64,000 nucleotides of DNA from Sminthopsis crassicaudata (Eukaryota). Shown piece by piece: positions 44,422 through 45,057 of the stretch. The DNA lies in contig NC_133619.1 in the NCBI RefSeq assembly GCF_048593235.1, positions 439,979,644 through 440,043,643 of the forward strand, in the 5' to 3' direction. The notes beneath the pieces were generated by a model, which searched no databases, had not been told where the DNA came from, and saw only the letters and a list, made by a program, of their open reading frames with translations. Position numbers and translations under genes: made by a program. Position 1 is the first letter of the stretch; every line of letters begins with the position of its first letter.

Positions 44422-45057
44422 CTAAGCTGCTGGCCCAGCGTGCCGGAAGCGGACGAAGTCCTGCAGCCAATGGAGCTGTTGGATGTTCGTTGGGTGAAAC
44501 ATCAAGCCGAGCTCCTCTTCTAGGATGTCGAGCACGGGCAGCACATAGAGCTTGTGCAGCCTGGCGGCCAGCCTGGGGTGGTAGGATTCAGGCTGGAAGC
44601 CCGCCGGAGGCCGCACCTCCTGCAGCACCAGGGCCAAGTCCTCGAGTCGGCTGAGGAGCTGCGCAGCTGCCAGCTCGTCCAGCGCGCTCTGAATCTGAGC
44701 GAGAGCGTCCGCGGTGGGAAGCGAATCCTCGCTTTCATCCAGACACTCCAAGGCGTCGAGCAAGCCACCCAGGAGCTGGCACAGTCGTCGGGGGCGCAGC
44801 TGCTGCAGGGACGTGCCGATCCTCCGCAAAGCCTCGAGGAACTGCTGCTCCTCAGCCAGCACTTCTGGGTCCTCTCCCCTTAGGGAAAGCGGGTTTTGAC
44901 GCAGGCGCCGAAAGGAGCTGCGGACCATCCCAGCCCCTTCCCGCAGACACTCCAAGCCATACAGAAAACGGCCCTCTTCCAGCCTTGTCAGCCTCTCCCT
45001 CACTCGTTCCAGCCGCACTCTCCGCACCATCCAAAAGCCGCTTGATAGGACGCCCAT
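44422..45057 (-). CDS. Intronless 211-aa Leu/Glu/Arg-rich, probably all-alpha protein of unknown family, copy 1
   Basis: Open frame, GCCATGG Kozak, upstream TTAAAA, GC and CCAAT boxes, downstream AATAAA, GC3-rich codons. Confidence 0.7.
   Translation of the reverse strand: MGVLSSGFWMVRRVRLERVRERLTRLEEGRFLYGLECLREGAGMVRSSFRRLRQNPLSLRGEDPEVLAEEQQFLEALRRIGTSLQQLRPRRLCQLLGGLLDALECLDESEDSLPTADALAQIQSALDELAAAQLLSRLEDLALVLQEVRPPAGFQPESYHPRLAARLHKLYVLPVLDILEEELGLMFHPTNIQQLHWLQDFVRFRHAGPAA

What the first reader, a model, noticed from the sequence alone, without database searches (positions are those of the whole stretch)
44422..45057. Orphan 211-aa helical protein with complete expression signals, identical in all four copies
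Seen: a 636-nt open frame, perfect Kozak (TGTGCC-ATG-G), TATA-like, GC and CCAAT boxes ~120-160 nt upstream, and AATAAA plus a U-rich element downstream. All four translations are identical, whereas I can see SNPs elsewhere in the units. The sequence is rich in amphipathic Leu heptads (LAQIQSALDELAAAQLLSRLEDLALVLQEV), has a basic N-terminus and shows no obvious signal peptide or TM segment. A second strong-Kozak ATG (Met44, gggATGG) could give a 168-aa form. Inference: a real helical-bundle protein, either a fast-evolving retrogene or a marsupial-specific gene.
Basis: partly seen in the sequence, partly recalled or inferred. Interest (0 to 1): 0.85.

Follow-up and report, generated by a model that had tools for sequence, protein, structure and literature searches.

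The report
Unannotated orphan gene in tandem repeat
Each unit of a 5.8-kb tandem repeat carries one small intronless gene for a helical protein with no known relatives; a second species keeps the same gene and promoter under weak selection, so it is probably a real, unannotated, lineage-restricted gene of unknown function.

Summary
A 636-nt ATG-to-stop frame lies at 44422-45057 (minus strand), with four DNA-identical copies. Each copy sits in one unit of a roughly 5.8-kb head-to-tail array that starts at 43120 and runs off the window.

The identity of the copies is weak evidence. The ORF lies inside a 1,635-bp variant-free block, and 20% of 636-bp windows in the unit are also invariant.

The real support comes from one relative, a 2.9-kb Logan contig (L001) from another species:
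- It has an intact ORF of the same length (202 codons) from the same aligned ATG.
- Nucleotide identity is 72% and protein identity 59%.
- dN/dS is 0.45-0.67.
- It has only two indels, both of 3 nt.
- Every other frame is closed.
- The CCAAT, GC/CACCC and TATA promoter modules align.
- Nothing else in the unit is conserved.

The conserved start is Met10 (45030). Met1 and Met44 are not conserved.

Pfam, PDB, two very large protein databases, viral contigs and fold searches found no relative. AlphaFold models are all-helical but low confidence. Transcription is not shown: most "RNA?" runs also hold the spacer, and only one small run (X7) is gene-specific.

Verdict: a probable real orphan gene in a macrosatellite. 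Function is unknown, and the retrogene idea is unsupported.

The parts
43120..64000 (.). Head-to-tail macrosatellite array of about 3.6 units of roughly 5.8 kb, cut off by the window end
   Evidence: Self-BLAST gives units starting at 43120, 48926, 54736 and 60534, 98.7-99.7% identical. The left boundary is sharp at about 43120.
43120..48925 (.). Repeat unit 1 (5,806 bp): the gene on a CpG-island-like segment plus AT-richer spacer
   Evidence: Only the gene part is conserved in L001.
45172..45219 (-). Core promoter: inverted CCAAT box (45219-45213), GC box (45198-45190), TATA-like box (45180-45172)
   Evidence: for coordinates. The same three modules, in the same order, align in L001.
45031..45150 (-). 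Inferred 5' UTR. The TSS near 45150 is inferred from the TATA position. If translation starts at the conserved ATG, this stretch includes the non-conserved Met1 codon at 45057.
   Evidence: About 65% identical to L001 between the CCAAT box and the ATG. The TSS itself is inference.
44422..45057 (-). Full ATG-to-stop ORF: 211 aa from Met1, stop TAG at 44424-44422
44422..45030 (-). Conserved coding sequence: 202 codons plus stop from Met10, the same length as the L001 ORF (L001:647-1255)
44269..44274 (-). AATAAA polyadenylation signal 150 nt after the stop
44197..44225 (-). T-rich downstream element
44262..45896 (.). Longest variant-free block among the units (1,635 bp), containing the gene and its promoter
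50228..50863 (-). ORF copy 2, DNA-identical
56033..56668 (-). ORF copy 3, DNA-identical
61886..62521 (-). ORF copy 4, DNA-identical

Best explanation
Each roughly 5.8-kb unit of this macrosatellite carries one complete, intronless RNA polymerase II gene that has not been annotated.

Gene model (minus strand):
- A compact CCAAT / GC-box / TATA-like promoter at 45219-45172.
- An inferred transcription start near 45150.
- A coding sequence of 202 codons from the conserved ATG at 45030. Use of the upstream, dunnart-only ATG at 45057 would give 211 codons.
- A stop at 44424-44422 and an AATAAA at 44274-44269, for an mRNA of about 0.9 kb.

Product: a roughly 23-kDa, Leu/Arg/Glu-rich, Lys-poor, soluble all-alpha protein with no detectable relatives outside one orthologue.

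Shown here: the gene predates the array. A second species has the same promoter and ORF at about 72% nucleotide identity, while nothing else of the unit is shared. The ORF is under weak purifying selection.

Inferred: a 5.8-kb segment holding the gene was tandemly amplified in the dunnart lineage. The copies are kept near-identical by unequal crossing-over and gene conversion, so the array acts as a dosage amplifier. By analogy with other ampliconic or macrosatellite genes, expression is probably restricted (germline or early embryo), and the protein probably acts through helix-mediated protein-protein contacts.
For: ORF and array:
- The ORF is present in four identical copies, and the array structure is clear.

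Orthologue L001:
- Similarity is confined to window 45118-44408.
- Both ORFs are 609 nt long from the same aligned ATG.
- An in-frame TAG closes the L001 frame 9 codons upstream of that ATG.

Coding constraint:
- dN/dS is 0.60 by NG86 (bootstrap 95% interval 0.42-0.84; 0.1% of replicates reach 1), 0.61 by YN00 and 0.45 by ML.
- Simulated neutral substitutions leave the frame open only 4% of the time.
- The ORF has two indels, both of 3 nt, in 606 nt. The aligned promoter/UTR has four in 182 nt (P about 2e-4).
- The other five frames have 1-8 stops in both species.
- Frame 0 has the best amino-acid conservation: 0.59 identity and BLOSUM62 2.8, against 0.48-0.53 and 2.1-2.3.
- 74 of 90 hydrophobic positions stay hydrophobic.
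- GC1/GC2/GC3 of 0.74/0.40/0.76 shows codon periodicity.

Promoter and transcription:
- The CCAAT, GC/CACCC and TATA modules align between the species.
- One small run (X7) holds 13 of 85 sampled words of the gene region and 0 of 208 of the spacer (Fisher p = 5e-8).
Against: - No transcript is demonstrated. The runs that hold the whole gene region (studies P1 and P2, kind only guessed as RNA) hold the spacer about equally well. The single read-laying run failed on a filter.
- Constraint is weak. By codon position the differences are 51/51/68, so the third-position excess is not significant on its own.
- Only one orthologue is known, and its species is unknown.
- The composition (Leu 20%, Arg 12%, Lys 0.5%) is what translating GC-rich DNA gives.
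- AlphaFold confidence is low.
- The exact protein is absent from a 15-billion-protein collection, so no annotation pipeline has called it.
- The function and expression pattern are pure analogy.
Confidence: 0.72

Rival explanations
1. The locus is a conserved promoter with a non-coding transcript or regulatory CpG island. The open frame is incidental and is never translated.
For: GC-rich islands often give long ORFs: 2.4% of shuffles of this 1-kb island reach 211 codons. The codon-position bias of substitutions is weak, at 51/51/68. The composition is that of translated GC-rich DNA. No protein relative or confident fold was found. No pipeline has annotated it.
Against: The frame, the start codon, the length (609 nt) and the stop position are all retained at about 0.5 substitutions per synonymous site. 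dN/dS is significantly below 1. The only indels are multiples of three, whereas the adjacent non-coding alignment has indels of 1, 1, 6 and 11 nt. Similarity ends 14 nt after the stop codon.
Confidence: 0.13
2. It is a chance ORF in repeat DNA, kept identical only by array homogenisation, with no function at all.
For: Identity of the four copies is not ORF-specific, since a 1,635-bp block is invariant. Whole units, spacer included, are held by the same sequencing runs.
Against: A second species has the gene at 72% identity, and it is the only conserved piece of the 5.8-kb unit, with an aligned promoter. Homogenisation within one genome cannot explain conservation between species.
Confidence: 0.05
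3. It is a diverged retrocopy, or a gene derived from a transposon or virus, belonging to a known family that has drifted beyond recognition.
For: The gene is intronless, lies among TE relics in a gene-poor AT-rich region, and evolves quickly.
Against: No parent or family was found by Pfam, PDB sequences, an exhaustive HMM search of 1.84 billion representatives, word-index searches of 5.8 billion clusters, or viral and metagenome contigs. There are no other copies in the window outside the array. There is no poly(A) relic directly after the polyadenylation site. The gene has its own conserved TATA/CCAAT promoter, which retrocopies normally lack.
Confidence: 0.1

Closest known systems
D4Z4 macrosatellite with the intronless DUX4 ORF (human 4q35; my own knowledge; DUX-family review PMC13558733 listed)
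   Same: It is a kilobase-scale head-to-tail array. Every unit is GC/CpG-rich around one complete intronless ORF, and the units are near-identical through concerted evolution.
   Different: DUX4 is a double-homeobox transcription factor of a recognisable family, whereas this protein has no detectable family. D4Z4 units are 3.3 kb and lack a polyadenylation signal in each internal unit, whereas here every unit has its own AATAAA. Expression and function are unknown here.
Other gene-bearing macrosatellites and ampliconic genes (RS447/USP17, DYZ5/TSPY, CT47; my own knowledge)
   Same: One protein-coding gene per tandem unit, high copy identity, and lineage-specific amplification.
   Different: Those genes belong to known families (deubiquitinase, NAP/SET-like and so on) and have documented, mostly germline, expression. 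Neither is established here.
Tandem array of RING-less TRIML1-like genes in the same genome (earlier scan finding s1-153237, unchecked)
   Same: It is in the same genome and is also a macrosatellite with one single-exon gene per unit, an open frame and no transcript shown.
   Different: That gene is an offshoot of an annotated family, whereas the present one is an orphan. The unit is 2.95 kb there and 5.8 kb here.
Taxonomically restricted (orphan) genes in general (e.g. PMC7028367, listed)
   Same: It is short, fast-evolving (omega about 0.5) and intronless, with low-confidence structure prediction, no homologues outside a narrow clade, and a composition reflecting local GC content.
   Different: It carries a canonical, conserved TATA/CCAAT promoter and is old enough to show dS of about 0.5 between two species, so it is not a very young de novo ORF.

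Membership tests
Gene-bearing macrosatellite | Head-to-tail tandem units of 1 kb or more with high identity between units | tested here: met
   About 3.6 units of roughly 5.8 kb, 98.7-99.7% identical.
Gene-bearing macrosatellite | A complete ORF with its own expression signals in every unit | tested here: met
   Four identical ORFs. The 1,061-bp promoter-to-poly(A) segment is exact in three units, and the fourth differs by one base, at the position matching 44261 of unit 1.
Gene-bearing macrosatellite | The ORF is transcribed | tested here: inconclusive
   P1/P2 runs hold gene and spacer alike. Run X7 is gene-specific at 13/85 against 0/208 words. Read laying failed.
Gene-bearing macrosatellite | Copy-number polymorphism between individuals | not testable with these tools
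   This needs long-read assemblies or read depth from several animals.
Protein-coding gene under purifying selection | Frame, start and stop retained in another species | tested here: met
   Both ORFs are 609 nt long from the aligned ATG, and all other frames are closed.
Protein-coding gene under purifying selection | dN/dS below 1 | tested here: met
   0.45-0.67 across four methods, with a bootstrap upper bound of 0.84. This rests on a single species pair.
Protein-coding gene under purifying selection | Peptide or ribosome evidence | not testable with these tools
   No proteomics or Ribo-seq access.
Processed retrogene | An identifiable parent gene | tested here: not met
   No relative other than the orthologue in 1.84 billion representatives or 5.8 billion clusters.
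Processed retrogene | A poly(A) tail relic at the 3' end, and no promoter of its own | tested here: not met
   The only A-run (A8, 44184-44177) lies about 85 nt past the AATAAA. A conserved CCAAT/GC/TATA promoter is present.
CYRI/FAM49 (PF07159), an Atlas feature lead | A match to the DUF1394 / CYRIA-B Rac1-binding domain profile | tested here: not met
   The Atlas score is only 0.60, and the tool itself flags the family as probably wrong. Pfam hmmscan does not list PF07159 at E up to 10 for the window protein or E up to 1 for the orthologue.
BH3-only / Bcl-2-like (motif resemblance, from memory) | A BH3 core with conserved Leu and an invariant Asp after the small residue (L-x-x-x-G-D) | tested here: not met
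   The window has LRRIGTS and L001 has LRRISRS. The Asp is absent in both and the Gly is not conserved. There is no Bcl-2 Pfam hit.

The most novel reading that the evidence does not exclude
This is a founding member of a previously unseen, marsupial-restricted protein family. It has an ancestral single-copy gene with its own TATA/CCAAT promoter, and in the dunnart lineage it was amplified into a macrosatellite because higher dosage is selected. That could happen in the germline or at embryonic genome activation, which would make it a marsupial functional counterpart of the eutherian gene-in-macrosatellite systems such as DUX4.
Probability: 0.12. Interest if true: 0.75.

Novelty: new member of a known kind. 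Interest (0 to 1): 0.5.

Why it matters
If the gene is expressed, it is a protein-coding gene that annotation pipelines have missed, and it defines a protein family with no detectable relatives. It would also be a second kind of gene-bearing macrosatellite in the dunnart genome. That gives a workable case for studying how lineage-restricted genes are born, retained under weak selection and then amplified. It would also let a marsupial laboratory model be used to ask whether amplified orphan genes serve germline or early-embryo roles, as in eutherians. More practically, it shows that identity among the copies of an array says little, and that one cross-species comparison is what separates a gene from a homogenised chance ORF.

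Tried and rejected
- Rfam on the whole window found no family, so this is not an snRNA, rRNA or tRNA array.
- Pfam on the protein, the orthologue and seven other open frames of the unit and the L001 flank found nothing above noise.
- PDB sequence search gave only E = 2 noise.
- ESM Atlas feature searches gave best scores of 0.79 (unnamed bacterial clusters) and 0.60 (CYRI/FAM49). Both were rejected.
- The exhaustive profile search gave one extra hit, P0002. It is a bacterial STAND-NTPase/TPR protein with hhalign probability 14%, rejected as compositional.
- A search for short ORF fragments with the C-terminal 99 residues found nothing.
- Viral and metagenome contig scans found nothing.
- Comparing the two halves of the protein showed no internal duplication.
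- Two AlphaFold runs gave pLDDT 49 and 56. Foldseek against AFDB clusters, Swiss-Prot and PDB gave only generic helical bundles at TM 0.38 or less, so no fold was assigned.
- A literature search for SRR16767750, marsupial macrosatellites and dunnart orphan genes found no paper on this locus.
- The N-myristoylation idea, prompted by the MG start of the 211-aa form, was dropped because Met1 is not conserved.

Full report
**1. The observation**

The minus strand of 44422-45057 is an uninterrupted ATG-to-TAG frame of 211 codons. BLAST of these 636 nt against the window gives four hits at 100% identity, starting at 44422, 50228, 56033 and 61886.

- inverted CCAAT box (CCATTGG), 45219-45213
- GC box, 45198-45190
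- TATA-like CTTAAAAGG, 45180-45172
- GCCATGG around the first ATG
- AATAAA at 44274-44269, 150 nt after the stop
- T-runs at 44225-44197

No 19-residue window reaches transmembrane hydrophobicity (maximum 1.05).

**2. The setting**

The ORF copies belong to a head-to-tail array. Its left edge is sharp at about 43120, and it is cut off by the window end at 64000. Units start at 43120, 48926, 54736 and 60534 and are 98.7-99.7% identical. Differences in unit length come from a variable (TA)n tract.

Rfam finds nothing in the window, so this is not an RNA-gene array. The ORF sits on a CpG-island-like segment (GC 0.58-0.68, CpG observed/expected 0.71-0.76). The 43 kb to the left is AT-rich, has no CpG island and has no recognisable gene.

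**3. How much the identity of the copies means**

It means little. Aligning the units gives 34 variant events, but these cluster at 43120-43830. The ORF lies in a 1,635-bp variant-free block (44262-45896) that also covers the promoter and 840 bp upstream of the ORF. Across the unit, 20% of all 636-bp windows are variant-free.

A 211-codon ATG ORF also appears in 2.4% of dinucleotide shuffles of the 1-kb island. Within this genome alone, a homogenised chance ORF could not be excluded.

**4. Cross-species evidence**

The word-index search of 5.8 billion protein clusters returned one relative, P0001. It is encoded on a 2,901-bp Logan contig from SRR16767750, here called L001.

Extent of similarity:
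- DNA similarity between L001 and the window is confined to L001:548-1269, matching window 45118-44408, at 71% identity. That stretch is the ORF, about 60 nt upstream of it and 14 nt downstream.
- A MAFFT alignment extends recognisable similarity (65%) up to the CCAAT box. The CCATTGG, GC/CACCC and TATA-like modules are in the same order.

The ORF in L001:
- The full ORF runs 647-1255. It starts at an ATG that aligns with the window's Met10 (45030).
- From that ATG both ORFs are exactly 609 nt.
- An in-frame TAG at L001:620-622 closes the frame 9 codons upstream, so the coding sequence is a self-contained single exon.
- The window's Met1 has no ATG counterpart in L001, and Met44 is Leu there.

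**5. Tests of coding constraint**

- Protein identity is 59%. Nucleotide identity over the aligned codons is 72%.
- dN/dS is 0.60 (NG86; bootstrap 95% interval 0.42-0.84, with 0.1% of replicates at or above 1), 0.61 (YN00), 0.67 (LWL85) and 0.45 (ML).
- Simulations that apply the observed substitution spectrum at random keep the frame open in only 4% of trials.
- The ORF has two indels, both of 3 nt, in 606 nt. The aligned CCAAT-to-ATG stretch has four (1, 1, 6 and 11 nt) in 182 nt. At that rate, two or fewer events in the ORF has P of about 2e-4.
- All five other frames carry 1-8 stops in both species.
- Frame 0 gives the highest amino-acid identity (0.59 against 0.48-0.53) and the highest mean BLOSUM62 score (2.8 against 2.1-2.3). 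74 of 90 hydrophobic positions stay hydrophobic.

A caveat: differences by codon position are 51/51/68, so the third-position excess is modest. All of this also rests on a single species pair. Taken together, these results reject a chance ORF and favour a weakly constrained coding gene.

**6. What the protein is**

No family could be assigned:
- Pfam and PDB sequence searches gave only noise.
- The HMM profile of the two orthologues, searched exhaustively against 1.84 billion representatives, found only P0001 and a marginal bacterial STAND/TPR protein. The latter has hhalign probability 14%.
- Further searches with the alignment and with the C-terminal 99 residues added nothing.
- Viral and metagenome contig scans found nothing.
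- ESM Atlas leads (0.79 and 0.60) are below the useful range.
- There is no internal duplication.

None of the exact 211-, 202- or 168-aa forms is in the 15-billion-protein collection, so the gene is unannotated. This also shows that the collection's coverage of unannotated marsupial ORFs is patchy. "Only one relative" therefore does not define the taxonomic range.

Two AlphaFold2 models predict eight or nine helices at low confidence (pLDDT 48.7 and 55.6; pTM 0.41 and 0.43). Foldseek returns only generic helical bundles, with TM at most 0.38.

The conserved 202-aa form is about 23 kDa with pI 5.8. It is 20% Leu, 12% Arg, 10% Glu and 0.5% Lys.

**7. Transcription**

This remains open. Eight runs labelled "RNA?" (the library kind is only guessed) hold words of 44300-45200. 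Four of them, from study P1, hold 100%.

As a control I queried the spacer 46700-48700. Three of those four P1 runs (X2-X4) hold 95% of it, and the P2 runs hold 29-65%. Their coverage is therefore not gene-specific. They may be DNA-type libraries, carry-over from a high-copy array, or whole-unit transcription.

Only X7, a small run from study P3, is specific: about 13 of 85 words of the gene region against 0 of 208 of the spacer (Fisher p = 5e-8). That is a lead, not proof.

**8. Explanation**

Shown here:
- a single-exon gene with a conserved promoter and a conserved, weakly constrained ORF
- the gene is the only part of the 5.8-kb unit shared with another species, so it predates the amplification
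- the copies in the array are near-identical

Inferred:
- transcription start near 45150, from the TATA position
- an mRNA of about 0.9 kb
- amplification of a 5.8-kb segment in the dunnart lineage, followed by concerted evolution
- increased dosage as the benefit of amplification
- restricted (germline or embryo) expression and a protein-protein interaction role, both purely by analogy with other ampliconic genes

An earlier scan note, which I did not check, names the genome as fat-tailed dunnart and describes another single-exon gene array in it.

**9. Comparison with known systems, and novelty**

The architecture matches gene-bearing macrosatellites such as D4Z4/DUX4, RS447/USP17 and DYZ5/TSPY (my own knowledge). 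The structural criteria for that class are met, but expression is untested.

The retrogene reading fails on three points: no parent gene, no poly(A) relic, and a promoter of its own. A BH3-like LRRIG motif (a resemblance recalled from memory) lacks the defining Asp in both species.

The locus is a new member of a known kind of arrangement, and its protein founds a family with no described relatives. Interest is moderate. It would rise sharply with evidence of expression and wider orthology.

Noticed in passing
window 43120-43290, against 48926-49096, 54736-54906 and 60534-60704: The first 171 bp of the outermost unit are only 90.6% identical to the inner units, which are 98.7% or more alike elsewhere. 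An edge unit appears to be escaping homogenisation.
   Followed up: partly
window about 43290, 49096, 54906 and 60704-60757: A (TA)n microsatellite differs in length in every unit. It is longest in unit 4 and accounts for the unequal ORF spacing (5806, 5805 and 5853 bp).
   Followed up: yes
window 45800-46520 (and the same place in the other units): A second GC-rich block (GC about 0.6, CpG observed/expected up to 1.0 at 46320-46520) lies 0.7-1.4 kb upstream of the gene. It has no Pfam-recognisable ORF and is not conserved in L001. Its nature is unknown.
   Followed up: partly
window 46700-48700, runs X2-X4, X20, X21, X5, X6 and X8: Runs of only 0.5-1.6 billion letters labelled 'RNA?' assemble 29-95% of the non-genic spacer of the unit. 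Either the array has many more copies than the window shows, or these are DNA-type libraries, or whole units are transcribed.
   Followed up: no
window 45158-45156 (minus strand): A second GCCATGG lies between the TATA-like box and the inferred transcription start. If the start were further upstream, it would open a 16-codon upstream ORF.
   Followed up: no
protein residues 76-84 (window about 44832-44806) and 92-96: There is a BH3-like LRRIG motif without the defining Asp (LRRIS in L001), and a conserved LxxLL motif (LCQLL in the window, LCRLL in L001). Both may be chance in a protein that is 20% Leu.
   Followed up: partly
L001:2243-2289, against window 5234-5280, 2163-2212 and 12475-12528: A short interspersed-repeat fragment is shared between the orthologue contig and three places in the window (76-87% identity). 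Identifying the repeat family could show what kind of animal SRR16767750 is.
   Followed up: no
window 43515-43830: Inter-unit variants cluster here and around the T-rich minisatellite at 43682-43741. The L1 identity was not confirmed by Pfam.
   Followed up: no
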